From the IMG/VR virus record IMGVR_UViG_3300023174_000042, positions 186,001 through 250,000 of that record: a stretch of 64,000 bases of DNA; one strand, written 5' to 3'. The translations under genes and the position numbers were made by a program. How positions within the stretch are numbered: the first letter of the stretch is position 1; each line of letters starts with the position of its first letter. This document shows positions 6,632 through 21,948 of the stretch, in pieces. The notes beneath the pieces were generated by a model. That model was not told the origin of the DNA, did no database searches, and worked only from the letters and a program-made list of their open reading frames with translations.

Positions 6632-7028
6632 AAACCACTTTTTTTTCAAATTGTAATACTATATCTCTTTCATATAGTTTGTTTTTAACATCTTCTTCAG
6701 ATTCTCCAAAGTGAAAAACTAAACGTTTTACTAATGAAAAATCAATGTTATCGGTTTCAACCTCCCAACCCATAGCAATAACTCCATCCATAGAATCAAT
6801 CAAAGAAAATACATCTGAATTTTGAACCAAATCAAAAGATATTTCTTCATTTATCATAGTTCCAACTTTTCTGATATATTCTAAGTCAGGTGGTGATGGA
6901 TAACCATTTGCTGGTTTTGATTCCCAATTTTCACCAAAAACTTCCAAAGTGTCGGAAAAAATAAATTCATAAATATTGTCCCCTTTATAGTTTGGACCTA
7001 AACCATTAATATAAATCAATCGATTCAT
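6621..7028 (-). CDS. hypothetical protein
   Basis: 135 aa ORF overlapping both neighbours, consistent with translational coupling. Confidence 0.7.
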   Translation of the reverse strand: MNRLIYINGLGPNYKGDNIYEFIFSDTLEVFGENWESKPANGYPSPPDLEYIRKVGTMINEEISFDLVQNSDVFSLIDSMDGVIAMGWEVETDNIDFSLVKRLVFHFGESEEDVKNKLYERDIVLQFEKKVVYEN

Positions 7029-8518
7029 ATAATATCACCATTTTTTGTGATTTTAGTTTCGTTAAGTCCGTCTTTAAAAATTAAATTTCCTCTTGTTGAT
7101 AATCCTATCAATCTTGTTCTTGGATTTTGTTTAATATAATTCAAAGAAACATCTAATTGATTTCCTGATTCAGAAAGTCTAATAACATTTTCTTTATTTT
7201 GTTTGTAAAGTTGGTTTGTCTTAGTTTCTTTTGATTTTTGATAGTTATTGTTGTCATCTTCATTTGTAAGAAAATATTTTGACAAAACTTTATCTACTTT
7301 GGATTCGGCAAAAGTCCCATGTTCAAATCTATCAACATTGGGATAATTTTTTCTTCCCCTTCTTCTTTCTCTGTGATATTCGTCTTGATCATCAAATTCG
7401 TTATCAAAATGATGTGTCATAGACTCAGTTTTTTCGCCTTGCATATTTCTGATTGCGATATTAGAATATGCCCCACCTAATAGGTCTTGGAATGCGTCGC
7501 CAAAATTGTCATATCCTTCGGCCATTTCAGGTTCTTGTGGTGGTTCAGGAGCCACATCTTCATTACCCATTTCAGGTTCTTCTATTTTTTTCTTTCTAAC
7601 TTTTATTTCTTCTTCATCTCCTTTTTCTTCACCTTCTTCTTCAACCCCCTCAAGTTTAGAAATAATTTGTTCAATATCGTCTTCGTCTAAAGCATCAACA
7701 TCAATCGCAGATAAAATAGAGTTAATAATATATTTTATGTCTTTAGCGTCCAATTCTTTTTCTTCCTCATACGATCTTATTTTTTGGGCTAACTTACCTG
7801 TTAAAATTTGTATTCTTTTAAGTTCTGATACCTTTTTTTCTTTTGGTTTTTCTTCAACATCAACTTCTTCCTCTTCTTCTTCTCCTCCCATATCAGGTGC
7901 CGGCATTGGTTGTTCTTCTCCTCCCATATCAGGAGCCGGTTCTTCCATTGGTGATCCTCCCATATCAGGAGCCGGTTCTTCCATTGGTGATCCTCCCATA
8001 TCAGGTGCTGGCATTGCTTGTTCTTCTCCACCCATATCAGGTGCGGGAGCAGGTGCTTCTGGTGCGGGTTCAGGAGCAGGAGTTGCGGGAGCGGGTTCTG
8101 TGGTTTCTGATTCAGGACCTTCCGTTGTTTTTGGTTTTTTACTTTTCAGTATGAACTTTTTTTTTTGCTCCCCTAAAAGTGGTGTCCCTTCTTCATTTTC
8201 AAAAAGAGTATTAATTTCTTTTGTCATTAGATTTAATCTCTTTAATGCTTGTGAATATGAAGAATAATATTTTCTTCCTTTAATATTGTCTATGTATTCA
8301 GTTTCAGACTCATTAATAGTTTTTTTAATGATATATCCTTGTCTTTCTTTGATAATCTCATAAGAATTACCATCCGCCAAACTGATTTTATACTCACTTG
8401 ATTGAATATCATTATTTCTTTGTGGGATATTTTCATTATAACGAGCAATTTCCATTATTCGTCTTAATTTGTCTGTTCCTTGAAGTTTTTCACTTCCGAT
8501 AGGTTTAATTCCTGCCAT
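7025..8518 (-). CDS. acidic Pro-rich repeat protein, possible prohead core or scaffold-associated protein
   Basis: 497 aa, Glu-rich, five PAPDMGG repeats, multiple xxE motifs; lies in the head gene cluster. Confidence 0.55.
   Translation of the reverse strand: MAGIKPIGSEKLQGTDKLRRIMEIARYNENIPQRNNDIQSSEYKISLADGNSYEIIKERQGYIIKKTINESETEYIDNIKGRKYYSSYSQALKRLNLMTKEINTLFENEEGTPLLGEQKKKFILKSKKPKTTEGPESETTEPAPATPAPEPAPEAPAPAPDMGGEEQAMPAPDMGGSPMEEPAPDMGGSPMEEPAPDMGGEEQPMPAPDMGGEEEEEEVDVEEKPKEKKVSELKRIQILTGKLAQKIRSYEEEKELDAKDIKYIINSILSAIDVDALDEDDIEQIISKLEGVEEEGEEKGDEEEIKVRKKKIEEPEMGNEDVAPEPPQEPEMAEGYDNFGDAFQDLLGGAYSNIAIRNMQGEKTESMTHHFDNEFDDQDEYHRERRRGRKNYPNVDRFEHGTFAESKVDKVLSKYFLTNEDDNNNYQKSKETKTNQLYKQNKENVIRLSESGNQLDVSLNYIKQNPRTRLIGLSTRGNLIFKDGLNETKITKNGDII
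7883..8047. repeat. coding tandem repeat (~36 bp unit) encoding PAPDMGG...
   Basis: Recurring cccatatcagg(a/t)gc core, with two identical cctcccatatcaggagccggttcttccattggtgat units. Confidence 0.85.
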
Positions 8519-8595
8519 AATTATTTTTTGTATTATGAATTATTTTTTTCTTAATAAATATATCAATAAATATATTTGTTTGAAATTCTGATTAA

Positions 8596-9330
8596 TTATT
8601 GTTTCATTGACAATCCCTTTTCTAAAATCTTGTGTGATGCTTCACTTAATTTTTCTAAATATCCATTTCTTCTTAGGATTTTAAACACCAAATTTTCTGA
8701 AGAATATTCGCCTCCTTTTTGAAGACCACAAGTTCTGAATTTTTTTAATTTGTCCTTGTATTTGGAAATTAATTCTTTAGCATCTTCAATATCTTCACCT
8801 TCAATATTTTCCAACACTTTATCAATATTGTCCATCCACTGCTTTGCCTTTCTTTTAATTGTGTTTTTATCTATTTCTATATCTTCTTTTTTTGGTTTGT
8901 TTTGCCAATCATTATATAATAATGAATATATACCGCTTGAAAAATGTGCTTCATCTTCCGATTCTACATATAATTCTGTTTCATAACCAAAAATTCTAAT
9001 GTCGTGATCTTTGTTAAAGATCGCTTTTTTTAACATAAATAATTCTTTATACAAGTCGATTTGGGAAGGTAGAAACTGATTGAAATTTGCAATTATGTGA
9101 ATGTCAAAATCAGAATATTTTGACCAATTATAATTTGCTAAAGAACCTGTTAAAACAATATCTGTAACAATTATGTCTATTTTAAGATATTCTATAAATT
9201 GATTGGCGATTTCCAACAAACGATTTCTTACTTCGGGTTTCATAGTATATGAATTACCCTCTTTAATCCATATTTTAGGATTTAATTCTTTTTGTGGTTC
9301 AAAACTTTTAATTAGTTCTGTTGTATTCAT
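8596..9330 (-). CDS. Pol-beta-superfamily nucleotidyltransferase
   Basis: Signature hGS...DhD: IVLTGSLANYNWSKYSDFDIHI, with a third acidic residue in ETELYVE. Confidence 0.8.
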   Translation of the reverse strand: MNTTELIKSFEPQKELNPKIWIKEGNSYTMKPEVRNRLLEIANQFIEYLKIDIIVTDIVLTGSLANYNWSKYSDFDIHIIANFNQFLPSQIDLYKELFMLKKAIFNKDHDIRIFGYETELYVESEDEAHFSSGIYSLLYNDWQNKPKKEDIEIDKNTIKRKAKQWMDNIDKVLENIEGEDIEDAKELISKYKDKLKKFRTCGLQKGGEYSSENLVFKILRRNGYLEKLSEASHKILEKGLSMKQ

Positions 9331-9349
9331 ATAGATAAATACTTTCTAA

Positions 9350-9592
9350 TTATAGTTTCTTGTATGGATAAGTTTTAGAAATGTTTTTATTAAAATAATT
9401 TCCTTGTGATTGAGCTGATCTAAATTCGGTATATTTTTGATGTGGGACATTATCATACTCATATCTCATACCATTTTTGAATTCCGCAATCATTTTTTTT
9501 GTTGATGTATCGTATTCAGTTCTAACGATGTTAGATGACTCTACTTCATTTAAAATTGTAAATCCACTAATTATTTCACTTGTAATTGCCAT
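9350..9592 (-). CDS. KTSC domain protein
   Basis: VESSNI--EYD...EFKNG-RYEYDNVP...SAQSQGNYFNKNI matches the KTSC pattern. Confidence 0.9.
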   Translation of the reverse strand: MAITSEIISGFTILNEVESSNIVRTEYDTSTKKMIAEFKNGMRYEYDNVPHQKYTEFRSAQSQGNYFNKNISKTYPYKKL

Positions 9593-10152: not shown

Positions 10153-10217
10153 AATTTTTTGTGTTTGATAATAAATATACACATATAAAAAAAAATCCAC
10201 CATAAAGGTGGATTAAA

Positions 10218-10580
10218 TTACTTAAGAGATTTTATTTGGTCTCGATATTGTATCGCTTTTTCAAAGTCTTGGGTTCGAATACATTCGTCCAATTTAAATT
10301 TCAACTTTGATAACTCTTCTTTGTTTTTTTCTAACTTTTTTATCTCATCTCTTAAATTTACCGCTTCTTCAAAATTTTCTTCTCTAACCGCCAAGTTTAA
10401 CTTTTCTTTTAACACATATAATTCATCAGTAGGTTTTTCATTATTAAAATTTCTTGTCATAAAAGACATAGAATACAAACCATCTTTTGATCTATAAGTA
10501 TTTTTAGTCCAGTTTTTATCATCGAAAGATGAAGAAAAAATTTCATTTAATAATTTGTCAAATTCGTTCCAATTAAACAT
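10218..10580 (-). CDS. tandem UVR (UvrB/C coiled-coil) protein, candidate ClpC adaptor
   Basis: Two UVR motifs, LNLAVREENFEEAVNLRDEIKKL and LDECIRTQDFEKAIQYRDQIKSL; divergent from clpC. Confidence 0.8.
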   Translation of the reverse strand: MFNWNEFDKLLNEIFSSSFDDKNWTKNTYRSKDGLYSMSFMTRNFNNEKPTDELYVLKEKLNLAVREENFEEAVNLRDEIKKLEKNKEELSKLKFKLDECIRTQDFEKAIQYRDQIKSLK

Positions 10581-10647
10581 TTTTTTTATTTTTTTTATAG
10601 GTTTATTTTGATTTTTTTATATGAAAAATTATACCAACCAATATTAT

Positions 10648-10702
10648 CTGACAAATTGTCAGTAAAATAATAATTTAGAAAAAATAAACTGACATTATGA
10701 CA
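10648..10702. promoter_or_regulatory. CTGACAnnnTG(T/A)CA inverted-repeat operators in the divergent promoter
   Basis: CTGACAAATTGTCAG at 10648-10662 and CTGACATTATGACA at 10689-10702. Confidence 0.6.
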
Positions 10703-10749
10703 ATTATGGACTTTTTATTTTATTAATATTATTATTTATAAAAAAAATT

Positions 10750-12792
10750 ATGTTAGAATTTATGGACGAAGGAAATGACAAATCTAAAAAAAAGAGTGAT
10801 AGCACAACTCCTGTTTTAGATAATTTTAGTAAAGACTTGAATAAGTTAGCACAAGAAGGAAAATTGGATCCTGTTATCGGAAGAAAAAAAGAAATTTTAA
10901 GAATTGCTCAAATTCTTTCAAGGAGGAAAAAAAATAATCCAATCATAATCGGTGAACCTGGAGCAGGAAAAACGGCAATTGTAGAAGGTTTAGCAATGAT
11001 GATTCATAATGGTGAATGTCCCAAAAATCTTATGGATAAAAGAATTGTATCATTAGATATGAATTCATTAGTTGCCGGAACTAAATACAGAGGTCAATTT
11101 GAAGAAAGAATGAAAGTAATTATTGAAGAATTACAATTGGCTCCAAATATTATTTTATTTATAGACGAAATTCACACCATTGTAGGAGCAGGAAATAGTT
11201 CAGGTTCGTTAGACGCTTCAAACATCTTCAAACCAGCACTTTCAAGAGGAGAAATTCAGTGTATTGGTGCCACAACACTTGACGAATACCGAACAAACTT
11301 TGAAAAAGACGGAGCGCTTGAGAGACGTTTTCAGAAAGTTATAGTTGATCCATCTTCAAAAGAAGAAACATTAGAAATTTTAATGTTAAGTAAATCAAAA
11401 TATGAAGATCACCATAAAGTTACCTATGATGAAAATACTTTAAAAATATTCGTTGAATTAGCAGATCGTTATATCACAGACAGAGAATTTCCTGACAAAG
11501 CATTTGATATATTGGATGAGGTTGGAGCAAGAATGCAAATTGATGTTAAATTACCAAAAGAAATAGAAGATTTAAAAGAAGAAGCAAATAAAATCAAACA
11601 AGAAAAAATAGACGTAATTAAAAAACAAGATTACGAACAAGCGGCCGAACTTCGTGATCGTGAAAGAAATGTTATTTCTAAACTTGATTTAGAGAAGAAA
11701 AAATTTGAGGAATTTTTAAAAAATAGCAAACGAAACATACCGGAAGAACTAATTTATGAAGTAGTATCTAACATGACAAAAATTCCTATTTCTAATATTA
11801 ATGTTGATGAAAAAAATAATTTAATTAATTTGAGTTCAAATTTGAATTCGAAAGTTATTGGTCAAGAAATTGCTGTTAACAAGATTTCAAAAGCAATCAG
11901 AAGAAACAGAATGGGAATCAAAGACCCAAATAAACCGATCGGTTCGTTTATATTTTTGGGGTCAACTGGTGTTGGTAAAACTTATTTAGCAAAACAATTA
12001 GCAAAAGAAATCTTTGGAAGTCCTGATAATATGATTCGAGTTGATATGAGTGAATACCAAGAAAAACACACAATATCGCGGCTTATTGGATCACCTCCAG
12101 GGTATGTTGGTCATGATGATGGGGGTCAATTAACAGAACAAGTAAAAAACAAACCTTACTCTGTTATATTATTTGACGAGATAGAAAAAGCACACAAAGA
12201 CATTTTCTCAACACTTCTTCAGTTGTTAGATGATGGTCATATTACAGATTCATTAGGTCGTAAAATTAACTTCAAAAATTGTTTAATTATTATGACTTCC
12301 AACATTGGAGTAAAAAAATTACAAGATTTTGGAACTGGAGTTGGTTTCAAGACCACAAAAAGTGATGTCGTTTTAGAAGAAGAAAAACAAGACGTTTTGA
12401 AAAAAGAACTAAAAAAGTTTTTTGCACCTGAGTTTTTGAATAGAATTGACGATGTTATTATTTTCAATAGTTTAGAAAAAAGTCATATTGATCAAATTAC
12501 AAAACTTGAAATTGATAAACTATTAAGTAGAGTTTTAGAAAAACATTATATCTTTTCTTACAACGATGATTTAATTGAATATATTTCTAAAGTAGGTTTT
12601 GATGAAACCTTTGGAGCAAGACCAATCAAGAGAGCAATTCAAGAAAAAATTGAAGATTTAATTTCAGAAAAAATATTAATGTCGGAAATTGAAGAAAATA
12701 AGGAATATGTTTTCAAAGTTGAAAATGATGAAATCATCGTAGTTGAAAAAGAAGAAAAACCAAAAAAAAGAAGTAGGAAAAAAAGCGAATAA
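10750..12792 (+). CDS. clpC: ClpC-type AAA+ chaperone lacking the N-terminal Clp repeat domain
   Basis: LDPVIGR, Walker A GEPGAGKT and GSTGVGKT, pore loops AGTKYRG and GYVG, UVR middle domain QDYEQAAELRD, ClpP-docking-type VGF loop, FGARP. Confidence 0.93.
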   Translation: MLEFMDEGNDKSKKKSDSTTPVLDNFSKDLNKLAQEGKLDPVIGRKKEILRIAQILSRRKKNNPIIIGEPGAGKTAIVEGLAMMIHNGECPKNLMDKRIVSLDMNSLVAGTKYRGQFEERMKVIIEELQLAPNIILFIDEIHTIVGAGNSSGSLDASNIFKPALSRGEIQCIGATTLDEYRTNFEKDGALERRFQKVIVDPSSKEETLEILMLSKSKYEDHHKVTYDENTLKIFVELADRYITDREFPDKAFDILDEVGARMQIDVKLPKEIEDLKEEANKIKQEKIDVIKKQDYEQAAELRDRERNVISKLDLEKKKFEEFLKNSKRNIPEELIYEVVSNMTKIPISNINVDEKNNLINLSSNLNSKVIGQEIAVNKISKAIRRNRMGIKDPNKPIGSFIFLGSTGVGKTYLAKQLAKEIFGSPDNMIRVDMSEYQEKHTISRLIGSPPGYVGHDDGGQLTEQVKNKPYSVILFDEIEKAHKDIFSTLLQLLDDGHITDSLGRKINFKNCLIIMTSNIGVKKLQDFGTGVGFKTTKSDVVLEEEKQDVLKKELKKFFAPEFLNRIDDVIIFNSLEKSHIDQITKLEIDKLLSRVLEKHYIFSYNDDLIEYISKVGFDETFGARPIKRAIQEKIEDLISEKILMSEIEENKEYVFKVENDEIIVVEKEEKPKKRSRKKSE

Positions 12793-12842
12793 AAAGATAG
12801 TAATTCAAAAAATTTTTATAAATTTGTTTAGTAACTTTACAA

Positions 12843-13355
12843 ATGAAAACATTATCAATTTTTATCTTCTTTATTTTCTTTCACAACTTTGGTCAAACTG
12901 TAAATGATATAATCATTAAAAAAGTTAATCAATATCGAAAAGAATATAATTTAACACCATTAAAATATTCTTCAGAGGCAAAATTAGCAAATACACAGAT
13001 GCTAAACTATATGGTCGAGACATCAACAATGCCAGTTGATCACTCCCAAAAGATTCCATCTTCTTTTGGAAAAACTTTTGATAATTTTTCTGATCGAATT
13101 ACATACCTGTATGGTTACAATTATGAATATATTGGTGAGAATTTATGCACTTTCGATGATAAAAAAACAGATGAAGAAAGAGCAAATAAAGTATTAGAAA
13201 TATGGAAAAAATCTCCAACACATAACGCTCTTTTACTTAGTCTTAAATATGATGGTGTTTGTGTTGGGTCTAAGATATCAAATACAATTTATTATGGTAA
13301 TTTGTATTATGAAAACACCCCAACCTTTTATTGTGTTTTAACAATGTATAAGTAA
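12843..13355 (+). CDS. secreted CAP/SCP domain protein
   Basis: Signal peptide; VNQYRKEYNL-PL, IGENL and WKKSPTHNALLL motifs. Confidence 0.85.
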   Translation: MKTLSIFIFFIFFHNFGQTVNDIIIKKVNQYRKEYNLTPLKYSSEAKLANTQMLNYMVETSTMPVDHSQKIPSSFGKTFDNFSDRITYLYGYNYEYIGENLCTFDDKKTDEERANKVLEIWKKSPTHNALLLSLKYDGVCVGSKISNTIYYGNLYYENTPTFYCVLTMYK

Positions 13356-13432
13356 AAATATATCAAATTTTTTAAAAACATTTTTTTTCTTTAATTAATT
13401 TTTATATATTTGTAGAAATAAACAAATACAAC

Positions 13433-13855
13433 ATGAAAACATTTCTTTTAACCTTCGGTCTTTTGTTATCTTTATTTAGTTTTTCTCAAAAATTAGTAAT
13501 TGAAATTTTCGAAAGACAAGAATTAATTTCTTATAGAAATACAACTTTAGATTCTGTAATTATGAGTCCTGATGTGGTTAGTGATCTTGAGGTTACAAAA
13601 ACAACATATGTCATTGATTTAGATGAAAAGACATCTTCTTACTTTGTTGGTGAAGAACTTTTAAGTGTTTTACCTGTTGATGTAATTCGTGGTGGTGATG
13701 GACTTTTTGTTGTAAAAATATTGGAAAAAGGATTTGATTACGGTTTGATTGTTCACATTGGAAATGATGGTGATAATGTTTTGTGGTACTGGAATGCCGA
13801 TCAAATGACCACAGTTAAAAAAATGATCAAGTTTAATATTGTCAAATCTTCATAA
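13433..13855 (+). CDS. secreted hypothetical protein
   Basis: Bacteroidetes-style signal peptide (SFS-Q); TATATTTG promoter upstream; paralog of the next ORF. Confidence 0.75.
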   Translation: MKTFLLTFGLLLSLFSFSQKLVIEIFERQELISYRNTTLDSVIMSPDVVSDLEVTKTTYVIDLDEKTSSYFVGEELLSVLPVDVIRGGDGLFVVKILEKGFDYGLIVHIGNDGDNVLWYWNADQMTTVKKMIKFNIVKSS

Positions 13856-13864
13856 AAAATCAAA

Positions 13865-14281
13865 ATGAAAAAACTTTTTTTAATCATCAGTTTGTTATTT
13901 TTTTTAATTTCCTTCTCTCAAAATATTATTATTGAGGTATATGAAACTCAACCATTTTACGGAGATACTTCACAGAAAATTGACGAAATTTTTGATAGTA
14001 ATTTGTATGATAAAATTTTACCGGCAGGTTGTAAATACTTTATTAATACAACACAAAATTATTTAGATTTTTATAGGAACGATACATTAAAAATGACATA
14101 CCCTATAAAAACGTCAAAAAATCAAAATTTTATTCAAATTGACATCTTGGTTAAAGGATTCAATGTAGGTTTGATCCTGAACCTAAATCCATTCAATGAA
14201 ATTGCGGCGTATTTTAACATACAGGAATCTTATGTAATTTATAACAAATTTATAAAATACAAAATCATCAAAGAGCAATGA
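13865..14281 (+). CDS. secreted hypothetical protein (tandem paralog of 13433..13855)
   Basis: Shares SFSQ---IE--E-Q and IL-KGF--GLI with the previous ORF. Confidence 0.75.
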   Translation: MKKLFLIISLLFFLISFSQNIIIEVYETQPFYGDTSQKIDEIFDSNLYDKILPAGCKYFINTTQNYLDFYRNDTLKMTYPIKTSKNQNFIQIDILVKGFNVGLILNLNPFNEIAAYFNIQESYVIYNKFIKYKIIKEQ

Positions 14282-14297
14282 AAAAAATTTTTGTTGA

Positions 14298-14783
14298 TTA
14301 TTTAACAGCGGCTCTAACTTTATCCATACCACTTCTAATTGCTGTTTGAATGTAATTAGATGTATTTGCGTCTGTAAAAGTAGTTTTAACAGAATCTATA
14401 AATGTAGATTGAAAAACTGATAATTTATAGGTAACATCATTAGATTTATATATGGGGTCTACTGCAGGTGATGGAGTTGCCGGACTTTCTAAAACTTTAG
14501 TTATTGCAACACCAAAATCTCTTGGAGATGTAACTTTTACTTTTCCATTTTCAAGTATAGAAATAGTTCCGTGATAATCATCAATACCCTTGTTATAGTT
14601 TGCGGTGTATGTTGCCATAGTAGTATCACCCTTTTTATATGCTGCCATAACACGGTTGAATTCATTTACAAACAAAGTTGCTGTATCACTTGCCCCTTCC
14701 ATCAAATATTGTCTTGATGTTGCATTTTGATGCATTTCCAAAATTCTTTGTTTTTCTTGTTCTGAGATTATAAATTGTTTCAT
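14298..14783 (-). CDS. tagged hypothetical protein
   Basis: Starts MKQFIISEQEKQRILEMH...YLME. Confidence 0.75.
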   Translation of the reverse strand: MKQFIISEQEKQRILEMHQNATSRQYLMEGASDTATLFVNEFNRVMAAYKKGDTTMATYTANYNKGIDDYHGTISILENGKVKVTSPRDFGVAITKVLESPATPSPAVDPIYKSNDVTYKLSVFQSTFIDSVKTTFTDANTSNYIQTAIRSGMDKVRAAVK

Positions 14784-14795
14784 AGTTATTTTAAT

Positions 14796-15305
14796 TTATT
14801 TTTGAGTTGGTGTTGCGTTATAGTCGGCAATTTGAAAAGATGCGTATTTACTATCACCGCTAAAATTGATAAACATTTTTTGAGAACCGGCTTGCATAGG
14901 TTTACCAAGTTCTACTTTTAATTTGTCATACATTTCTTGAGTTAATCCAAATGAACCTGAAATATTTCCATTACTTGTGTCCGTAGCTTTAGTTGTAATG
15001 CCAACCGCAGCAACATCATCAAACGCCATGGCGGTTATTTTTTTATATTCATCAGTATTAAAACCTCCACCAGGTGTTTTTTGCCCAATTATTGTAAATT
15101 TTGCTCTTCCAAGTGGATTGTATTTTTTAGATTGGTTTTTTGGATCTAACGTATATGGTAAATAAATATATATGGTTGGGGTATTTGATTGTGTTATACC
15201 TTCGTCTTCCATCAACAAATGTCTTGATTTTTCTTCTAGTCTTCTACTTTCTAACATCAAGTTTGCTTCTTGAATGTGTCTAATTTTGCTAAAACTTTTA
15301 TTCAT
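14796..15305 (-). CDS. tagged hypothetical protein
   Basis: Starts MNKSFSKIRHIQEANLMLE...LLME; TATTTAT upstream. Confidence 0.75.
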   Translation of the reverse strand: MNKSFSKIRHIQEANLMLESRRLEEKSRHLLMEDEGITQSNTPTIYIYLPYTLDPKNQSKKYNPLGRAKFTIIGQKTPGGGFNTDEYKKITAMAFDDVAAVGITTKATDTSNGNISGSFGLTQEMYDKLKVELGKPMQAGSQKMFINFSGDSKYASFQIADYNATPTQK

Positions 15306-15377
15306 AATTTTGTAATTTATTTAATAAATACTTTGTATAGTCAAAAAATAAATCTATATTTGTAGAAATAATATAAA

Positions 15378-16409
15378 ATGAATATAGAAAAATTTAAAGA
15401 ACTCTTATCTGTCCCAACCAAGACTTATAAAGAAAGTAAAATGGTTGAATACATATTGTCAGTTCTTGAGGGTATGGAAGGTGTGATTTATAACTACGAT
15501 GATCATAATAACATATACGCAACAAAAGGCTCATTAGAAGATGACGAGTTTTATCCCATGTTTATTTCTCATACAGACACGGTTCATGAACTTGTTGAAA
15601 AAATAGTTGTTAAAGAAGAACAACTTGTTCGCCCATTTACATTTGGAAAAGATTTCGGAAAAGATCAAGTTTTATGTTTAAAAGCATATGATAAAGATGA
15701 TAAACCAACAGGAATTGGTGGTGATGACAAATGTGGAATTTATATTTGTTTGGAACTTCTATCTCAATTAGACAAAGTTAAAGTGGCATTTTTTGTTTCA
15801 GAAGAAACGGGTTGTCACGGATCAAAATTTGTTGATAAAGAGTTTTTAAAAGACGTTGGTTACTGCGTTCAATATGACGCACCAGGAGATCATTTAATTT
15901 CTCAATCTTGTTTTGGAACCACTTTATTTGATAAAGAAGGAGAGTTTTTTAAATTATCACTTGAAGCGATCACAAAAGGGTTTGGTAATGAAATGATGGT
16001 TCAGTCTCATCCATATACCGATATTATGATGATTAAACAACAATCTGATCTATCTTGTATCAATATGTCATGTGGTTATTATAATATGCACACAGCAAAC
16101 GAATTTGTTTGTATCGATGACGTTCAAAGAGCAATTGAATCAGGAAAAAACATGGTAAAAGATCTTGGTTTAAAAAAATATGAATTTAAATATAATGAAC
16201 CAAAACCAACAAAATCTTTACTACCGTTTGATGATTTCGATGAAAACCCATTTTATGATGATGTTCATCAATTAACTTCGATTGACATAATTGAAGATAA
16301 AGATGGTATTATAATCTCGGATATATACGATGAAAACCAATTTTTTATTGATGATGAAGATGGTTACAAATTATATGAGATTTTAAAAGAACGTTATCGT
16401 CTTAATTGA
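15378..16409 (+). CDS. M20/M28-family zinc peptidase
   Basis: Metal ligands SHTDTV, GGDDKCG, EETG and the C-terminal GYYNMHTANE; TATATTTG promoter. Confidence 0.85.
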   Translation: MNIEKFKELLSVPTKTYKESKMVEYILSVLEGMEGVIYNYDDHNNIYATKGSLEDDEFYPMFISHTDTVHELVEKIVVKEEQLVRPFTFGKDFGKDQVLCLKAYDKDDKPTGIGGDDKCGIYICLELLSQLDKVKVAFFVSEETGCHGSKFVDKEFLKDVGYCVQYDAPGDHLISQSCFGTTLFDKEGEFFKLSLEAITKGFGNEMMVQSHPYTDIMMIKQQSDLSCINMSCGYYNMHTANEFVCIDDVQRAIESGKNMVKDLGLKKYEFKYNEPKPTKSLLPFDDFDENPFYDDVHQLTSIDIIEDKDGIIISDIYDENQFFIDDEDGYKLYEILKERYRLN

Positions 16410-17527
16410 CCTGGATCAATTCTAAACTCAGTTGGGTTAAATAAACCTGGCTGAGTTACCATTTGAATTACCTCATTAGCAGACGCCAAACCATATTTAC
16501 GATCACCAAAATAACTACCTGAACCGATTAAATATTTTACCTTTAATGTTTCAGGATCAACTGACTCCACTTTTATAAATAAATTTTTTTGACCTGGAAT
16601 TTCTTTTCTATAAAATAAATTCAAAGATGAAAGCTTATCTATAATTTTTCTAAATTCAGAAGAAAATTCTTCTTGGGCTCTTTCTATATATTCATCAATC
16701 AAATCAACTAATTTTTCACAAGACTCAGATTCAAACATTTCATCATCCATTACATAATATTCCATTTCGTAATGTTCAGGAAGACCATGTATAAATTTTT
16801 TATATATTTTTTGAATTAATACGTCAAGAACTTTTCCATCAAATTCACCATCTTCAATAAATAACTGTACCAGATTACCCCAACTTATAAAGTATAATCC
16901 AAAACACCACTTACCCCATTTTTCAACTCCAAACTGACTAAGTGTTTCACAATATTCTTTTTCGATTGCTTCTTTAGCTCCCGATTCAGTTGCATTCGCT
17001 TTAGCAGAACATATAATCTCATCTATTTCATCTGCAATATGTTGAAAGTATTTGTCTAATACACTTGTAATCGCACCTTCATCATCAATTCTACCGTTTT
17101 CATGAATATTATCAACAAGGTTAGGTGAGATTATTTTAAGTAATTCTTTTAATCTGATTTTTGCTTCACGACAAAGATATCCTAAAGTATATCCCTCACT
17201 CCAATCGTCGTATGCTCGATCTTGACACTCACTATAAAAATCATAAGAACCATAATACATACGATCATAGTTAATAGCATCCCACTCACCGTCAGTTCCT
17301 TCTTCAAATGTAGGATAATGAAAAAACTTTAAAAACTGTTCTAAATCATCAAAATCAAATAATAGACCATCAGGTTTTACTTGAACATGATTTAAGTTCA
17401 AACCTTCATGATTATCACTTTTGAATTCAACATCATCGGAAGACAACTTTCTTTTATTTAAAAGAAGAATTTTTTGAAAGTCCGTCATTTCTGAAACATC
17501 ATTTTCTACTAAAAGTCTTTTTTTCAT
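16394..17527 (-). CDS. acidic hypothetical protein with a short tag
   Basis: 377 aa; starts MKKRLLVE; TATTTATA upstream. Confidence 0.75.
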   Translation of the reverse strand: MKKRLLVENDVSEMTDFQKILLLNKRKLSSDDVEFKSDNHEGLNLNHVQVKPDGLLFDFDDLEQFLKFFHYPTFEEGTDGEWDAINYDRMYYGSYDFYSECQDRAYDDWSEGYTLGYLCREAKIRLKELLKIISPNLVDNIHENGRIDDEGAITSVLDKYFQHIADEIDEIICSAKANATESGAKEAIEKEYCETLSQFGVEKWGKWCFGLYFISWGNLVQLFIEDGEFDGKVLDVLIQKIYKKFIHGLPEHYEMEYYVMDDEMFESESCEKLVDLIDEYIERAQEEFSSEFRKIIDKLSSLNLFYRKEIPGQKNLFIKVESVDPETLKVKYLIGSGSYFGDRKYGLASANEVIQMVTQPGLFNPTEFRIDPGQLRR

Positions 17528-17594
17528 ATATTTATAAATATATTGGATAATACAAATCTTTGTATTATATTTGTATAGAAGTTATTTGACATAT

Positions 17595-18002
17595 GGGCCT
17601 ATATCGGAATTGACGGGCGTTGGTTGAATAAAAGAAGCATGTAGGGACTAAGTTAATCTCTTTAAAAACTGACTTAGAAAACAACTGGCAATGTGCTAAA
17701 CAAAATGGAAACTCTTGGTTTACTAAGAGGTTCTGAAGTTACTGTAGCTTAAGAAGTTTACGGAAACGCGAGCCGGTTCACATACGCTCAGGAACAGAAG
17801 TGATGAAGGTGAAATACAACTGAACCATAAATCGAGTTGTCTATTGGTTTTTAATTTACGATAGTGAAGAACAAATTAAAATTGTTTTTGATCAAGTAAA
17901 AATCAAATATTTTGGGGTATTAGAAAATACCAACCTAAACATGTAGTTGTCTTTTAGACAAAACGAGCCGGACGAGGGAGTCGGAGCCCTCTAGGTCCAC
18001 CA
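17595..18002 (+). ncRNA. ssrA: tmRNA
   Basis: 5' GGGCCTA pairs with 3' TAGGTCC-A-CCA, giving the G3:U70 Ala identity pair; GGAATTGAC D-loop analog; internal tag ORF at 17687-17752; TATATTTG promoter upstream and terminator downstream. Confidence 0.93.
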
Positions 18003-18007
18003 ATTGA

Positions 18008-18040
18008 TCCCACTATTTAATTATGGTGGGATTTTTTTTG
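18008..18040 (+). terminator. intrinsic terminator after tmRNA
   Basis: ATCCCAC...GTGGGAT hairpin followed by a T run. Confidence 0.75.
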
Positions 18041-18059
18041 TGCCTTAGTTTTAAAGCAT

Positions 18060-18095
18060 AAAAAAAGGGATCAATTGATCCCTGAATTTTTTTTG
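18060..18095. terminator. bidirectional terminator
   Basis: A-tract, GGGATC-AATT-GATCCC hairpin, T-tract, between convergent RNA genes. Confidence 0.7.
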
Positions 18096-18132: not shown

Positions 18133-18940
18133 ACGCTGAGATTACACGTCGTGTTTGAGAACCTTTAGAGTCATTATTGTTTCTACTCTTATCCACTTTC
18201 TTTTGGAAAGTATTTCTCAGTGCTGGTTATTTAGGTGAACCACTCCTTGAGATCTTATCTACTCTCTTACTACTCGATACTCTTCGAGGATGCCTCCCCA
18301 ATTGATCCTTGCGGGACTAGAGATCTTTTGTAAAACTACACTCGGTCTTGGGAACCTAATGTGCCACGGACAACCCGTGACTAAGTAAGCACCTTTCAAC
18401 AAGATCTGACGGACACTTTTCCTTATTTATAATTAATTGTTTAATGATAATTAAGTTTTGTGTCGTGGATTGTCGAAGTAGTGGTCCGCCACCAGAGCCA
18501 ACCCATCTTTTGAACGAGTCGATACTCAACTACTCCGTGAAATGTCCCCATTTCCATACTTCAAGAACTCTTCGAATTATTACCTTGGTGGGTAATTAAT
18601 AAGGACGATGTCAGCACCACCTGTTACTCATCTTGTCTTTCGACGTTAAGATTCCTTTGATATTGGAACTCGCAATTAAAGTGTTGGAGCACTTAGTTTT
18701 GCAAAAATCCCTACGAGTTATTCCTATTGGTGTCCCCACCTCAATTAGACGACCCACATCGCCCAATCATCTAACCACTTTCCCTACAGCGTCGCCCTCG
18801 GTACTAAAGGTTAAACGGTATCCCGCTTGTGTACTCGACCTCAATTATCCGAAGACAACTAAGACGCAAACCATATAACACAAATGGTTCACTTTATCCC
18901 ACTTTCGTGGTTTATTTTAATGGACCATACACGGCCCAAT
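18133..18940 (-). ncRNA. large structured ncRNA, GOLLD-like
   Basis: ~810 nt, GC-richer than its flanks, no credible ORF, dense hairpins with GNRA loops on the minus strand (CCAC-GAAA-GTGG, GTC-GAAA-GAC, TCCC-GCAA-GGA); own promoter and boxA. Family assignment rests on size and context only. Confidence 0.65.
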
Positions 18941-19468: not shown

Positions 19469-20770
19469 TTAGAGAACTTTTTTCATGATATTTTTTATAT
19501 TATGGATTTCATAAATTAATTCTTCATTTATTTCTTTTACTTTTGAAGTTGAAATTGCTGGAGGTGCAATATTTTTTGTCGTCAACGTTCTTTTGATACC
19601 TTCACCAGTTCCCCATTTTTTTAAATCTGAAGAACAATTCGTTGCTATGTTTATTGCTCCAATATCTTTCTTTAATCCATTCACAATACAACCATAATTA
19701 CCATTCATCAAAGTTTGAGCCGTGGCATCAATACCATCAGACTCAGATTTATAATTTCTAACGCCACCTAAACATTTTCCTTCTTTTCTTTTTAAACAAT
19801 TCCAAAAAGAAGATCCTTCTTTTTTTTGTGTTGTATTAAAAGGGTTAAATGTTGATTTAGCACCTTCGGCTTGTCTCCATGCGTAAAAAAATAATAAATT
19901 TTGTGGTGACTCAGGTGCCCCAATTTTTTTTAACACTTGAGAGTAAAACTCATCATCTGTTTGTGCGGGTTTTGTTATTTTATAATCACTTATAGACGTT
20001 GTTTGACTTGTTTGACTTGATTGGTCAGAATCTAATGTTTGCTCTTCTTTAGATGACACAGAAGTGGTCGGTTGATCTTTAAATCCAAAAAACTTTTTCC
20101 ATTGATCACTACCTTTTGAAACACGGTCACTAATACCAAGACTTGAAGTAATCTGACTTACAAAATCGTTAATTGAAAAATCTTTTGTTTTTTTATCTTG
20201 ACTTGATTGACTTGATTGATCTTGACTTGATGTATCATCAGATTCAGGTGCTGAAGTATCTACAGTGATTTTTTCTTTCAAATATGAGTCACAATTTTTG
20301 TCTCTGTTTGGTCCTGATCCACAGAATGTAAAATGCCAAGGTTCTCCAACCGCCTTTCCCTCTCCCCATGTCCAACCATATTTTTCTCCATTCTCTTTAA
20401 TCCATTTTTGAACGTTTGATGGCGATATATCAATTGCTCTACCCCATCCGTGATTTGAACTTCCAGGATAAGCCGCCGCAGTTCCTGCTGTCCCCTTTTT
20501 TCTTTTTTTTCCCGTTTTTTCATAATGGTCAAAATCAAAAATTTTACACTGAACATTCAAAGGTCTATAAGAATCTGATAATTTAACTGAACTTTTTATT
20601 TCACTTGGCATATCAGAATACATTTTTATAAATGCGTTTGCTGCGTCTGTTTGTAATTTATGATTACCAATACCAAGAGATTTTAGTTGGGAATTACTAA
20701 TACATCCACTCGCATCTCCAAAACCTGAGCATGGATCGGAAGAACTACAAGCCGATTTTGTAACTTTCAT
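19469..20770 (-). CDS. two-domain peptidoglycan hydrolase (M15B/VanY-like peptidase plus lysozyme-like domain)
   Basis: SYR...AAYPGSSNHGWGRAID...EPWH (M15B); Ser/Gln linker; AWRQAEG...FNPFNTT...GVRNY C-terminal domain. Confidence 0.8.
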   Translation of the reverse strand: MKVTKSACSSSDPCSGFGDASGCISNSQLKSLGIGNHKLQTDAANAFIKMYSDMPSEIKSSVKLSDSYRPLNVQCKIFDFDHYEKTGKKRKKGTAGTAAAYPGSSNHGWGRAIDISPSNVQKWIKENGEKYGWTWGEGKAVGEPWHFTFCGSGPNRDKNCDSYLKEKITVDTSAPESDDTSSQDQSSQSSQDKKTKDFSINDFVSQITSSLGISDRVSKGSDQWKKFFGFKDQPTTSVSSKEEQTLDSDQSSQTSQTTSISDYKITKPAQTDDEFYSQVLKKIGAPESPQNLLFFYAWRQAEGAKSTFNPFNTTQKKEGSSFWNCLKRKEGKCLGGVRNYKSESDGIDATAQTLMNGNYGCIVNGLKKDIGAINIATNCSSDLKKWGTGEGIKRTLTTKNIAPPAISTSKVKEINEELIYEIHNIKNIMKKVL

Positions 20771-20791
20771 ATAAATAAATACTCTGTTATT

Positions 20792-21259
20792 TCAAAACCA
20801 TTCAGGAATTTCTCTATTTTTCCATTTAGCAAACTCTTTTTTTGCCCCACGATAATAATTTCTGTAGGATTCTACCACATCACCAACTTTATATTCGTCA
20901 GGCATTGCTTTAGGTGGTGTGGTGAAGTTTTTATCTGCGATATTTGGTTTATTAGACAAGCACCATTCTATAACATCTTGTGACTTGTGTCTTTTACCAT
21001 AACGATATGTATATTCTTTACACAACTCTAAACCAAGATCACATAAATAAAGATAATTAGATAATGACTCACGAACCCATATGGCACAAGGATGATTTTT
21101 ATGTGATAACTTGTAGGGAACTTGGGGGGTAACTTGGGGGGTCATATGGTGAACTCCACATAAAAGTTGTGCGGTTTCCAATATCATTTTAACAACGTGT
21201 TTATCGCAATGATATTTAGCACATTTATTAGTGTCAAAATCCAAAAAGAAAATGTTCAT
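20792..21259 (-). CDS. pyrimidine-dimer DNA glycosylase / endonuclease V-like family protein
   Basis: MNIFFLD...CDKHVVKMILETAQLL...HKNHPCAIW...EYTYRYGKRH. Confidence 0.75.
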   Translation of the reverse strand: MNIFFLDFDTNKCAKYHCDKHVVKMILETAQLLCGVHHMTPQVTPQVPYKLSHKNHPCAIWVRESLSNYLYLCDLGLELCKEYTYRYGKRHKSQDVIEWCLSNKPNIADKNFTTPPKAMPDEYKVGDVVESYRNYYRGAKKEFAKWKNREIPEWF

Positions 21260-21282
21260 ATCACAAAGATATGAAATGTTAT

Positions 21283-21885
21283 TTACTTATTCAAATAACT
21301 CATTAAAACACCACCAACGGAGGAAGCATGAACTAACAGATGATTTACAGATTCAATATCTAAAACGGTTTTCTTTTTTGTGTAATCGACCGAAAGAATA
21401 CCTATAAACTTATCTTCAATTGTTTTGATAGCAAATAAATAAGACGATTTAGATCCACATTCTTCTGCAATGTATTTAAGACCAAAAGTTGCAACTTTTT
21501 CGTCTTTGAAGTCTGGAATTTGAATAATATCGTTTTGGTAAAGTTCGTTAATTGCTTTTGAAAAAAGTTGGACTGGTATATTTTGAAAACTTGTCTGAAT
21601 AGATTGTGCGTTTGCTCCGACTGATTCATAAACAATAGAAAATTTAGCCATAGACTTTCCTGTTGGATAAAAATTTCCACCATTGTGAAATTGTGAAATC
21701 CAAACACGATCTGCTTTGAATTCTTCTTTGATATGATCAATTTTTTGATTCACTAACTCGCTCACTCTAAGAGTGTCGGTAACCATATCAGGTTTTTTCT
21801 TATTTTTGTTTAATAAATTTTTTATAAGTAGAATACTAATTGGTCCCAAGACTCCAGTAATAAATGCAATTATAATCTCTGCCAT
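21283..21885 (-). CDS. membrane-anchored GAF-fold protein, possible T4 gpT-like holin
   Basis: Probable start MAEIIIAF at 21885; single N-terminal TM helix, then ADRVWISQFHNGG...IGILSVDY; near the PG hydrolase. Confidence 0.6.
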   Translation of the reverse strand: MAEIIIAFITGVLGPISILLIKNLLNKNKKKPDMVTDTLRVSELVNQKIDHIKEEFKADRVWISQFHNGGNFYPTGKSMAKFSIVYESVGANAQSIQTSFQNIPVQLFSKAINELYQNDIIQIPDFKDEKVATFGLKYIAEECGSKSSYLFAIKTIEDKFIGILSVDYTKKKTVLDIESVNHLLVHASSVGGVLMSYLNK

Positions 21886-21948
21886 ACAAATTATTTTATA
21901 CAAATAAATATCCCCCACTTTTATAAAATAGGGGATACTTTTTTTTCT

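What the first reader, a model, noticed from the sequence alone, without database searches (positions are those of the whole stretch)
10218..18002. Phage proteostasis module: N-domain-less ClpC, tandem-UVR partner, peptidase and own tmRNA
Seen: ClpC starts about 20 aa before the first AAA domain, with no Clp_N repeats, but keeps the UVR middle domain and VGF loop. It is divergent from a gene with two UVR motifs, and a zinc peptidase and a tmRNA lie within 5 kb. Known: ClpC adaptors bind through the N and middle domains, and UVR motifs pair with each other. Inference: the UVR protein regulates a rewired unfoldase that uses host ClpP and may recognise the phage tmRNA tag.
Basis: partly seen in the sequence, partly recalled or inferred. 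Interest (0 to 1): 0.65.

Follow-up and report, generated by a model that had tools for sequence, protein, structure and literature searches.

The report
Jumbo-phage ClpC, peptidase, tmRNA module
A 273-kb uncultured T4-like phage, and hundreds of its relatives, carries a ClpC unfolding motor that has lost its regulatory N-domain, next to a small protein that copies ClpC's own middle-domain tip, an aminopeptidase and a phage tmRNA with its own 21-residue tag; together they look like a phage-owned protein-recycling kit, but that function is untested.

Summary
At 10218-18002 lie a 120-aa protein with two UVR motifs, a divergent 680-aa ClpC without Clp_N, a PepT/TET-like metallopeptidase and a tmRNA (Rfam 64.9 bits, cut-off 47).

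- **N-domain loss:** all 78 complete phage homologues lack the N-domain. All 78 bacterial best hits with intact upstream DNA keep it.
- **Conserved features:** ATPase motifs, pore loops, the M-domain tip (Y295, R302, D303) and the G-[VI]-G-F ClpP loop.
- **Linkage:** the peptidase lies just downstream of ClpC in 77/80 loci. The tmRNA is found in all 60 loci with enough downstream DNA.
- **Tag:** its 21-22-aa frame is under coding-type selection and differs from the 9-aa Bacteroidota tag.
- **UVR protein:** accessory. It is present in 46/78 loci, with at least 9 changes on the tree. In four close relatives DnaK fills its slot.
- **ClpP:** none in this 272.6-kb record, but four relatives encode their own.
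- **Co-fold:** no verdict.

Published S. aureus work shows that ΔN-ClpC becomes an adaptor-free SsrA degrader once M-domain contacts are broken. A GOLLD RNA and a ClpC-specific palindrome are new. Verdict: new variant of a known kind.

The parts
10218..10580 (-). UVR2: 120-aa protein. N-terminal helix plus beta-hairpin (residues 1-45), then two UVR motifs sharing one long helix. F70/E71/A73/R77/D78 and F106/E107/A109/R113/D114 are invariant in the 17-sequence alignment; in the wider 36-locus set only R77, D78, E107 and R113 stay invariant.
   Evidence: Pfam UVR 4.7e-19 with 2 stretches. Alignments A1 and A3. AlphaFold2 model pLDDT 70. hhalign to ClpC 275-308, E 4.4e-5.
10194..10214 (-). Terminator-like hairpin with a T-run, directly after the UVR2 stop codon.
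10648..10662 (.). Perfect palindrome CTGACAAATTGTCAG in the 170-bp divergent UVR2/ClpC intergenic region; a second, weaker copy lies at 10689-10703. Probable operator.
   Evidence: TGACA-N3-TGTCA lies 58-140 bp upstream of ClpC in 54/79 loci, often twice. Only 2 exact copies exist in the 272.6-kb genome, and the other is inside a gene. Absent from 80 bacterial clpC loci.
10750..12792 (+). ΔN-ClpC, 680 aa: 20-residue Lys-rich tail, AAA1, M-domain (residues ~262-330; tip Y295, R302, D303 = S. aureus F436, R443, D444), AAA2, ClpP loop V531-G532-F533 (nt 12340-12348), D2-small domain.
12843..15305 (.). Variable insert of five small genes, including a CAP-domain protein at 12843-13355. It separates ClpC from the peptidase in this phage only and is not part of the conserved module.
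   Evidence: Each gene is found in 1-5 of 80 loci. CAP Pfam 6.8e-07.
15378..16409 (+). MH-clan dinuclear metallopeptidase (PepT/M20B- and TET/M42-like), 343 aa. Catalytic domain of ~265 aa plus an 80-aa acidic C-terminal extension specific to this subclade.
   Evidence: Pfam, PHROG 4191 and NCBIfam. H65, D116, E142/E143, D167 and H238 are invariant in 37 sequences. Fold match. Present in 77/80 loci.
16394..17527 (-). 377-aa hypothetical protein between the peptidase and the tmRNA; function unknown.
   Evidence: tblastn in 28/80 loci at 21-90% identity. No Pfam, PHROG, NCBIfam or Atlas lead.
17595..18002 (+). Phage tmRNA. Acceptor stem GGGCCUA/UAGGUCC with G3:U70, encoded CCA, and tag frame 17687-17752 giving GNVLNKMETLGLLRGSEVTVA*.
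   Evidence: Rfam. Tag. Compensatory acceptor-stem variants. Present in 60/60 loci with enough downstream DNA.
18006..18083 (.). Terminator after the tmRNA (18006-18033, +) and a bidirectional hairpin (18066-18083) between the convergent tmRNA and GOLLD genes.
18133..18537 (-). GOLLD RNA, conserved 3' domain. The ORF-poor stretch up to about 19468 may hold its variable 5' domain (inference).
   Evidence: Rfam 309.4 bits against a cut-off of 150. Convergent with the tmRNA in 17 loci of the window's subclade.

Best explanation
This is a phage-owned protein-turnover and ribosome-rescue module on the conserved backbone of a clade of T4-like jumbo phages. Their hosts are probably Bacteroidota.

1. 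ΔN-ClpC is an active double-ring unfoldase that docks on ClpP through its G-[VI]-G-F loop. It would use host ClpP in this phage and a phage ClpP in some relatives. The motifs and the loop are shown; docking is inferred.
2. Without the N-domain it escapes N-domain-dependent repression and adaptor gating. Its pore is then open to C-terminal degrons. This is inferred from S. aureus ΔN-ClpC biochemistry.
3. UVR2 carries two copies of the M-domain-tip motif F-E-x-A-x-x-x-R-D. It would cap ClpC M-domain tips and so prevent the inactive head-to-head ring dimers that ΔN-ClpC forms. This step is inferred. UVR2 is an accessory modulator, not a required part.
4. The phage tmRNA is charged by host AlaRS and delivered by host SmpB. 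It tags stalled nascent chains with a phage-specific 21-aa peptide. The tRNA-like and coding features are shown; the fate of tagged chains is inferred.
5. The PepT/TET-like peptidase trims the released peptides to amino acids for phage protein synthesis (inferred).

My probabilities for the sub-claims:
- ClpC is a functional gene: 0.9.
- ClpC acts with ClpP as a protease: 0.7.
- The peptidase acts downstream of it: 0.5.
- UVR2 binds the M-domain: 0.4.
- ClpC degrades tmRNA-tagged chains: 0.35.
For: - N-domain: all 78 complete phage homologues are 664-688 aa with at most 42 open codons upstream. All 78 bacterial best hits with intact upstream DNA have at least 159.
- Motifs: Walker A/B in both rings, the KYR and GYVG pore loops, the M-domain tip and the ClpP loop are conserved at 90% or more.
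- ClpP: none in the 93%-complete record. True ClpP genes (E 1e-51 to 1e-58) occur in four relatives.
- Peptidase: next to ClpC in 77/80 loci despite inversions and inserts. Metal ligands are invariant and the fold matches PepT and TET.
- tmRNA: present in 60/60 testable loci, always on the ClpC strand. At least 11 acceptor-stem variants keep 7 pairs and G3:U. Tag codon positions vary 18/13/21, with G1, K6, G11 and L12 invariant and A21 in 30 of 33. The tag differs from GENNYALAA and GEYNYALAA of Bacteroidota and Ignavibacteriota.
- UVR2: always adjacent and divergent when present (45 of 46 carrier loci). It matches ClpC residues 275-308.
- Related gene in the same slot: in L002, L003, L005 and L008 the slot holds DnaK, and L057 has both. 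An independent gain of a chaperone gene at this site supports the proteostasis theme.
- Literature: ΔN-ClpC binds ClpP but forms inactive M-domain-mediated rods, while ΔN-ClpC-F436A degrades GFP-SsrA without MecA (PMC12583610). UVR-domain proteins are trapped with plastid CLPC1 (PMC8889267).
Against: - UVR2 is missing from 32/78 loci. The nearest relative is among them, and the M-domain is unchanged there.
- ClpC, peptidase and tmRNA sit in a collinear backbone. The flanking KTSC, nucleotidyltransferase and 497-aa genes are conserved to the same degree (74-76/80), and the portal and terminase genes lie next door. Linkage may therefore reflect descent rather than function.
- In the huge phages LR745206 and LR756508, N-less ClpC is not next to a tmRNA, and no UVR2 or peptidase homologue lies within 20 kb of it.
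- There are no expression data and no binding data.
- The S. aureus precedent comes from a Bacillota enzyme about 55% identical to this one.
Confidence: 0.5

Rival explanations
1. Three separately useful backbone genes with no direct coupling. ΔN-ClpC is a deregulated general protease arm for host-proteome breakdown. The tmRNA belongs to the adjacent RNA island (tmRNA, GOLLD, six tRNAs) that keeps ribosomes working, and tagged chains go to host ClpXP or other proteases.
For: - Neighbouring backbone genes are equally conserved.
- The tmRNA lies beside GOLLD and 5 kb from a tRNA cluster.
- Huge phages with N-less ClpC keep their tmRNA elsewhere or have none.
- Phage tmRNAs occur without any phage ClpC in mycobacteriophages and Bacillus phage G (PMC4131195).
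Against: - ClpC, peptidase and tmRNA stay together through inversions of the peptidase and variable inserts.
- The tag is long, conserved internally and unlike the presumed host tag. That suggests a dedicated reader.
- Removing the N-domain is exactly what gives ClpC SsrA proficiency in vitro.
Confidence: 0.27
2. UVR2 targets the host ClpC rather than the phage ClpC. As an M-domain-tip mimic it would break the host ClpC resting state or block its adaptors. This would be a host-takeover factor comparable to SPO1 Gp53.
For: - The host-type (Bacteroidota) ClpC is the closest bacterial kin, so it probably has a similar M-domain.
- M-domain contacts hold the resting state together, and breaking them is toxic (PMC5699869, PMC12583610).
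- SPO1 Gp53 is a precedent for a phage protein acting on host ClpC (PMC6873191).
- An accessory, often-lost gene fits a host-specific weapon.
Against: - UVR2 is strictly adjacent to and divergent from the phage clpC, sharing one regulatory region.
- It was never found away from ClpC in the records searched.
Confidence: 0.13
3. ΔN-ClpC is a virion-assembly or disaggregase chaperone that works without ClpP. It would sit beside the portal and terminase genes for that reason.
For: - The gene lies 5 kb from the terminase and 8 kb from the portal gene.
- Jumbo-phage ClpA and ClpX have been proposed as assembly chaperones (PMC7824862).
- DnaK is the neighbour in some relatives.
- This record has no ClpP.
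Against: - The ClpP-docking G-[VI]-G-F loop is at least 90% conserved across the 81 sequences, with G532 and F533 invariant in the 36-sequence alignment.
- Several relatives carry a true ClpP.
- An aminopeptidase is the tightest partner gene.
Confidence: 0.1

Closest known systems
Bacterial ClpC (S. aureus, B. subtilis; PDB 6em8, 3j3s) and the engineered ΔN-ClpC / ΔN-ClpC-F436A (PMC12583610)
   Same: - Two AAA+ rings, a UVR-type M-domain with an aromatic tip residue plus R/D, and the ClpP loop.
- 720 bits to S. aureus ClpC over residues 151-792.
- The natural protein begins where the engineered ΔN construct begins.
   Different: - The N-domain is absent by nature in a whole phage clade.
- There is no MecA- or McsB-type docking site.
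- The tip residue is Tyr, not Phe.
- The lineage nests with Bacteroidota ClpC at about 55% identity.
UVR-motif partners of ClpC: McsA, plastid CLPF, EXE1/2, UVR2-4
   Same: A UVR motif in proteins that associate with ClpC (PMC8889267). There are weak hits to McsA (NCBIfam 43 bits; PDB 8wtb).
   Different: - It has no McsA zinc fingers and scores far below the McsA cut-off of 210 bits.
- It has two tandem UVR motifs on one long helix plus a short beta-hairpin domain.
- It is known only from this phage group.
SPO1 Gp53, a phage adaptor-like protein for host ClpC (PMC6873191)
   Same: A small phage protein proposed to modulate a ClpC protease.
   Different: Gp53 acts on host ClpC, SPO1 has no ClpC of its own, and no sequence relation was seen.
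Phage tmRNAs (mycobacteriophage Bxz1 group, Bacillus phage G; huge phages)
   Same: A phage-encoded tmRNA that relies on host factors (PMC4131195, PMC7162821).
   Different: - It is in conserved linkage with a phage ClpC and a peptidase.
- It has a 21-22-aa clade-specific tag.
- There is no phage SmpB.
PepT (M20B) and TET (M42) aminopeptidases
   Same: The fold and the dinuclear metal site. These enzymes finish peptides released by ATP-dependent proteases (established knowledge).
   Different: It is a minimal catalytic domain of about 265 aa. Sequence scores are far below the PepT equivalog cut-offs. The oligomeric state is unknown.
GOLLD RNA (RF02032)
   Same: A full-length match to the conserved 3' domain, in a phage, near tRNA genes (PMC12286853).
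   Different: Here it is convergent with a tmRNA. In LR745206 it lies 2 kb upstream of another N-less ClpC.

Membership tests
ClpC (class I Hsp100 with M-domain) | Two AAA+ modules with intact Walker A/B motifs and pore loops | tested here: met
   Pfam AAA and AAA_2. Motifs conserved at 90% or more in 81 sequences.
ClpC (class I Hsp100 with M-domain) | Short coiled-coil M-domain with a UVR motif inside AAA1 | tested here: met
   UVR at residues 276-307. Y295, R302 and D303 align to S. aureus F436, R443 and D444.
ClpC (class I Hsp100 with M-domain) | ClpP-docking loop (L/I/V)-G-(F/L) | tested here: met
   V531-G532-F533. G532 and F533 are invariant in 36 sequences.
ClpC (class I Hsp100 with M-domain) | N-terminal double Clp_N repeat domain | tested here: not met
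   No Clp_N in the protein or anywhere in the genome. At most 42 open codons upstream in 78 of 78 homologues.
tmRNA (RF00023) | Score above the Rfam gathering cut-off over the full model | tested here: met
   64.9 bits against 47, model positions 1-374.
tmRNA (RF00023) | tRNA-Ala-like acceptor stem with G3:U70 and a CCA end | tested here: met
   GGGCCUA/UAGGUCC followed by ACCA. 39 relatives have perfect stems in 11 compensatory variants.
tmRNA (RF00023) | Conserved in-frame tag ending at a stop codon | tested here: met
   A 21-22-aa frame in 47 of 54 sequences examined; the third codon position is the most variable.
tmRNA (RF00023) | SmpB partner | tested here: not met
   No SmpB in the phage record at E <= 1. 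Host SmpB is presumed.
McsA (arginine kinase activator) | N-terminal zinc fingers plus a C-terminal UVR motif; NCBIfam equivalog cut-off | tested here: not met
   43.4 bits against a cut-off of 210, and only the UVR part matches. One Cys in the whole protein and none in the N-terminal half.
MH-clan metallopeptidase (M20/M42) | Pfam score above the cut-off, conserved His/Asp/Glu/Asp/His metal ligands with a catalytic Glu, and the fold | tested here: met
   M42 30.7 bits against 23.2 and M20 26.0 against 24.6. H65, D116, E142, E143, D167 and H238 are invariant. PepT, TET and DapE fold matches at 1e-13 to 1e-9.
PepT equivalog (tripeptidase) | NCBIfam equivalog cut-off | tested here: not met
   18-37 bits against cut-offs of 255-293.
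GOLLD RNA (RF02032) | Score above the Rfam gathering cut-off over the full model | tested here: met
   309.4 bits against 150, model positions 1-416.
ClpC adaptor acting through the M-domain (MecA-like in function) | Physical binding to ClpC and a change in its activity | not testable with these tools
   The single co-fold job returned no verdict. Biochemistry is needed.

The most novel reading that the evidence does not exclude
Phages have evolved a natural counterpart of the engineered hyperactive ΔN-ClpC-F436A. They use an N-domain-less ClpC whose self-inhibiting M-domain contacts are relieved in trans by a tandem M-domain-tip mimic (UVR2). This motor would be paired with a phage tmRNA that writes a private 21-aa degron, distinct from the host's GENNYALAA. 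Together they would form an orthogonal tag-and-destroy pathway that feeds an aminopeptidase for amino-acid recycling. It would be switched by a dedicated palindromic operator.
Probability: 0.2. Interest if true: 0.85.

Novelty: new variant of a known kind. Interest (0 to 1): 0.62.

Why it matters
- **ClpC regulation:** control of ClpC by its N- and M-domains is an active field and a drug-target question. A large natural clade of ΔN-ClpC, with a candidate trans-acting M-domain mimic, would give a ready test of the 2025 resting-state model. It would also supply new reagents for it.
- **Phage tmRNAs:** their role is unclear. A tmRNA with a conserved, non-host tag held next to a phage unfoldase and peptidase turns the question 'what happens to phage-tagged proteins?' into a direct experiment.
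- **Phage biology:** the module suggests that jumbo phages of Bacteroidota bring their own protein-recycling machinery, which bears on infection in nutrient-poor waters.
- **GOLLD:** its neighbourhood here, beside a tmRNA and beside another N-less ClpC in a 635-kb phage, adds a lead for an RNA of unknown function.

Tried and rejected
- **Co-fold:** ClpC(1-345) with UVR2, using paired 36-row alignments, scored ipSAE 0.17 and 0.19 against a mark of 0.32. The result is no verdict, neither for nor against binding.
- **Sequencing runs:** No read mapping was done, read laying was not used, and there is no expression evidence.
- **GenBank phages:** megablast of the region found nothing. The tblastn search found no cultured phage with a close homologue; the best matches are the huge phages at 58-59% identity.
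- **UVR2 fold:** Foldseek against the PDB gave no significant match (best E 0.5). Only weak, non-significant ClpC M-domain rows appeared.
- **Unknown neighbours:** Atlas searches for the 377-aa and 497-aa proteins gave only viral hypotheticals or nothing.
- **Independent N-domain loss:** the free tree places LR745206 apart from the T4-like clade. The AU test does not reject one clade of all phage ΔN-ClpC (p 0.24 and 0.46). The claim is dropped.
- **M-domain versus UVR2:** the M-domain is the same in UVR2+ and UVR2- loci.
- **Host operator:** the ClpC palindrome is absent from 80 bacterial clpC loci.
- **UVR2 relocation:** UVR2 was not found elsewhere in five UVR2- records of 67-106 kb.
- **McsA label:** the JGI name 'McsA' on some UVR2 homologues is rejected.
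Full report
**Context**

The window is bases 186001-250000 of a 272,576-bp IMG/VR virus record that CheckV rates 93% complete. It encodes a T4-type portal (739-2547) and large terminase (3954-5732), six tRNAs and has 30% G+C. Shine-Dalgarno-like motifs occur 20 to 1 bp upstream of only 2.9% of 273 crudely called genes, against 13.8% in coding background. TATAAATA is enriched upstream of genes, 8.8% against 0.5%. The record is therefore a T4-like jumbo phage. SD-poor translation signals and the ClpC tree (below) point to a Bacteroidota host, which remains an inference.

**Checking the observation**

- The 120-aa protein (10218-10580, minus strand; called UVR2 here) has two Pfam UVR stretches, E 4.7e-19.
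- ClpC (10750-12792, plus strand, 680 aa) has AAA, AAA_lid_9, UVR (276-307), AAA_2 and ClpB_D2-small but no Clp_N.
- ClpC aligns to S. aureus ClpC residues 151-792 at 720 bits, and to PHROG 4871 only from profile position 161.
- The upstream intergenic gap is 170 bp, and no Clp_N domain exists anywhere in the genome.
- The ClpP loop is V531-G532-F533.
- The peptidase (15378-16409) matches Pfam M42, M20 and M28 and PHROG 4191.
- The tmRNA (17595-18002) scores 64.9 bits in Rfam against a cut-off of 47. ARAGORN misses it here.

**Relatives**

A scan of IMG/VR with ClpC found at least 598 viral stretches. The 80 best (66-92% identity) were fetched with 8-kb flanks.

*ClpC*
- All 78 complete homologues are 664-688 aa, with at most 42 open codons upstream.
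- All 78 bacterial best hits that have intact upstream DNA (46-57% identity) have at least 159 upstream codons, enough for an N-domain.
- Walker A/B motifs of both rings, the KYR and GYVG pore loops, the M-domain tip and the G-[VI]-G-F loop are conserved at 90% or more.
- By the alignment, Y295, R302 and D303 correspond to S. aureus F436, R443 and D444. Those residues mediate M-domain head-to-head contacts (PMC5699869, PMC12583610).

*Origin of the phage ClpC*
- The phage clade is monophyletic and nests among Bacteroidota ClpC sequences.
- Two huge phages, LR745206 and LR756508, also have N-less ClpC, with 47 and 8 open codons upstream.
- The AU test does not reject a single clade of all phage ΔN-ClpC (p 0.24). 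Independent N-domain losses are therefore not shown.

*Gene neighbourhood*
- tblastn of the window's genes on the 80 loci shows a conserved backbone. It runs: 497-aa protein, NTP_transf_2 protein, KTSC protein, (UVR2), ClpC, peptidase, (377-aa protein), tmRNA.
- The peptidase is found in 77/80 loci, directly after ClpC and on either strand.
- In the window, five variable genes (12843-15305) are inserted between ClpC and the peptidase.
- A profile nhmmer search finds the tmRNA in 60 loci, always on the ClpC strand, with a median of 2.7 kb after ClpC. All 20 loci without a hit are cut off less than 5.6 kb after ClpC.

*The tmRNA and its tag*
- At least 39 copies have a perfect 7-bp acceptor stem with G3:U. 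They come in 11 sequence variants carrying compensatory changes, and most encode ACCA.
- The tag frame is conserved at 21-22 aa. The window's tag is GNVLNKMETLGLLRGSEVTVA (17687-17752).
- G1, K6, G11 and L12 are invariant, and A21 occurs in 30 of 33 distinct versions.
- Codon positions 1, 2 and 3 vary at 18, 13 and 21 of 21 sites. This is a coding-type pattern.
- Bacteroidota and Ignavibacteriota genomes that hold the closest ClpC kin have the 9-aa tags GENNYALAA and GEYNYALAA.
- The phage has no SmpB.

*The peptidase*
- H65, D116, E142, E143, D167 and H238 are invariant in 37 sequences.
- The AlphaFold2 model has pLDDT 88. It matches PepT (1.7e-13), TET/M42 aminopeptidases and the DapE catalytic domain.
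- Most homologues are 260-280 aa. The window's subclade adds an 80-aa acidic tail.

*UVR2*
- A family HMM finds UVR2 in 46 of 78 loci with upstream DNA. It is always on the strand opposite to ClpC, adjacent in 45 loci and about 1.5 kb upstream in L072.
- The ClpC tree needs 13 changes of UVR2 presence, and at least 9 are forced by well-supported branches. The nearest relative, L008 (92% ClpC identity), lacks UVR2.
- Five UVR2-negative records of 67-106 kb hold no copy elsewhere.
- The M-domain is the same in both groups.
- In the 17-sequence family alignment the two motifs are invariant: F70-E71-x-A73-x3-R77-D78 and F106-E107-x-A109-x3-R113-D114.
- In the wider 36-locus alignment only R77, D78, E107 and R113 stay invariant. 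F106 is at 90% or more, and F70 is often Tyr.
- Profile comparison aligns motif 2 to ClpC residues 275-308, E 4.4e-5.
- The model (pLDDT 70) shows a helix, a beta-hairpin, and two helical hairpins sharing one long helix.
- UVR2 relatives occur only on phage-like contigs.

*DnaK in the same slot*
- In L002, L003, L005 and L008 the UVR2 slot holds a full-length Hsp70/DnaK, PF00012 E 2.6e-259. L057 has both genes.
- The window's genome has no DnaK.
- A second, independent chaperone gene at this position supports a proteostasis theme beyond shared descent.

*ClpP*
- None is found in the window's record, even at E <= 1.
- True ClpP genes occur in four relatives (the records of L049, L075, L063 and L040) and in both huge phages. 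In the two relatives examined (L049 and L075) it sits in a variable region 30-50 kb after ClpC.
- ClpP is absent from the fragments of L008, L009 and L060.
- 'Host ClpP' therefore fits this phage and probably its subclade, but not the whole clade.

**Mechanism**

The published S. aureus results (PMC12583610) are these:
- Deleting the N-domain destabilises the resting state and lets ClpC bind ClpP.
- The hexamers then pair head-to-head through M-domain contacts and form inactive rods.
- Adding F436A gives a very active enzyme that degrades GFP-SsrA without MecA.
- SsrA is read by the pore, and the N-domain acts as a selectivity barrier.

The phage ClpC is a natural ΔN form with an intact aromatic tip. 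A protein carrying two tip-like motifs is a reasonable candidate to compete for those contacts. I therefore rate M-domain binding at about 0.4 and treat UVR2 as a modulator. Tag recognition by ClpC is plausible at about 0.35 and untested. The tightest gene partner of ClpC is the aminopeptidase, which fits a role in finishing peptides to amino acids.

**Caveats**

- The module sits in a collinear backbone, so linkage may reflect descent rather than function.
- The huge phages do not keep ClpC beside a tmRNA.

**Regulatory features**

- A perfect palindrome, CTGACAAATTGTCAG, lies at 10648-10662. TGACA-N3-TGTCA is conserved upstream of ClpC in 54/79 loci, often in two copies.
- The motif is almost unique in the genome and absent from bacterial clpC loci.
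- Terminator-like hairpins follow UVR2, the tmRNA and GOLLD.

**GOLLD**

- A 309-bit GOLLD match (18133-18537, minus strand) lies convergent to the tmRNA. It is present in 17 loci of the window's subclade.
- In LR745206 a GOLLD RNA lies 2 kb upstream of that phage's N-less ClpC.

**Comparison with the literature**

- Phage Clp ATPases, ClpP and ClpS are known (PMC7824862).
- Phage tmRNAs are known (PMC4131195, PMC7162821).
- GOLLD in phages near tRNA genes is known (PMC12286853).
- A phage adaptor for host ClpC is known (PMC6873191).
- I found no description of a natural N-less ClpC clade, its tandem-UVR neighbour, or its linkage to a peptidase and a tmRNA.

**Verdict**

This is a new variant of a known kind; interest 0.62.

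Noticed in passing
window 18133-18537 (-), possibly extending to ~19468: GOLLD RNA (Rfam 309 bits), convergent with the tmRNA and separated from it by a bidirectional terminator. It is present in 17 loci of the window's subclade.
   Followed up: partly
L162 (LR745206.1) 17535-17940 and ~19900-21900: In a 635-kb huge phage, a GOLLD RNA lies 2 kb upstream of another N-domain-less ClpC (59% identity), with tRNAs nearby. This is a second GOLLD-ClpC neighbourhood.
   Followed up: partly
window 10648-10662 and 10689-10703: Palindrome TGACA-N3-TGTCA in the UVR2/ClpC divergent promoter region. It is conserved upstream of ClpC in 54/79 relatives and nearly unique in the genome. The binding protein is unknown.
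   Followed up: partly
L008 5961-7829 (-); also L002, L003, L005, L057: A full-length phage Hsp70/DnaK occupies the slot divergent from ClpC in close relatives. It replaces UVR2 in four of them and sits behind UVR2 in L057.
   Followed up: partly
G006:C1:245312-245839, G007:C1:275850-276377, G008:C1:143701-144228, G011:C1:86309-86836: Relatives encode a true ClpP (E 1e-51 to 1e-58); in G006 and G007, the two checked, it lies in a variable region. The window's own record has none.
   Followed up: partly
window 7025-9592 (-): Three backbone genes are conserved with ClpC in 74-76 of 80 loci: a 497-aa protein with no family, an NTP_transf_2 nucleotidyltransferase (8596-9330) and an 80-aa KTSC-domain protein (9350-9592). 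Their functions and any link to the RNA genes are unknown.
   Followed up: no
window 12843-13355 (+): A CAP (cysteine-rich secretory protein family) domain protein lies inside a five-gene insert that is almost unique to this phage.
   Followed up: no
window 22848-27550 (-): A cluster of six tRNA genes (Asp, Glu, Met, Ile, Phe, Ser) lies 5-9 kb beyond the tmRNA and GOLLD.
   Followed up: no
window 19469-21259 (-): A VanY-type D-Ala-D-Ala carboxypeptidase domain protein (433 aa) and a pyrimidine-dimer glycosylase (Pyr_excise domain, the T4 endonuclease V family).
   Followed up: no
whole record G000: Shine-Dalgarno-like motifs are depleted upstream of genes (2.9% against 13.8% background), and TATAAATA is enriched upstream. 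This fits a T4-like phage of an SD-poor host such as Bacteroidota.
   Followed up: partly
window 17978-17995: ARAGORN misses the window's tmRNA although Rfam scores it above the cut-off. The cmscan alignment shows one extra base in the T-loop (8 against 7). The same T-arm sequence is present in L008 and L009.
   Followed up: partly
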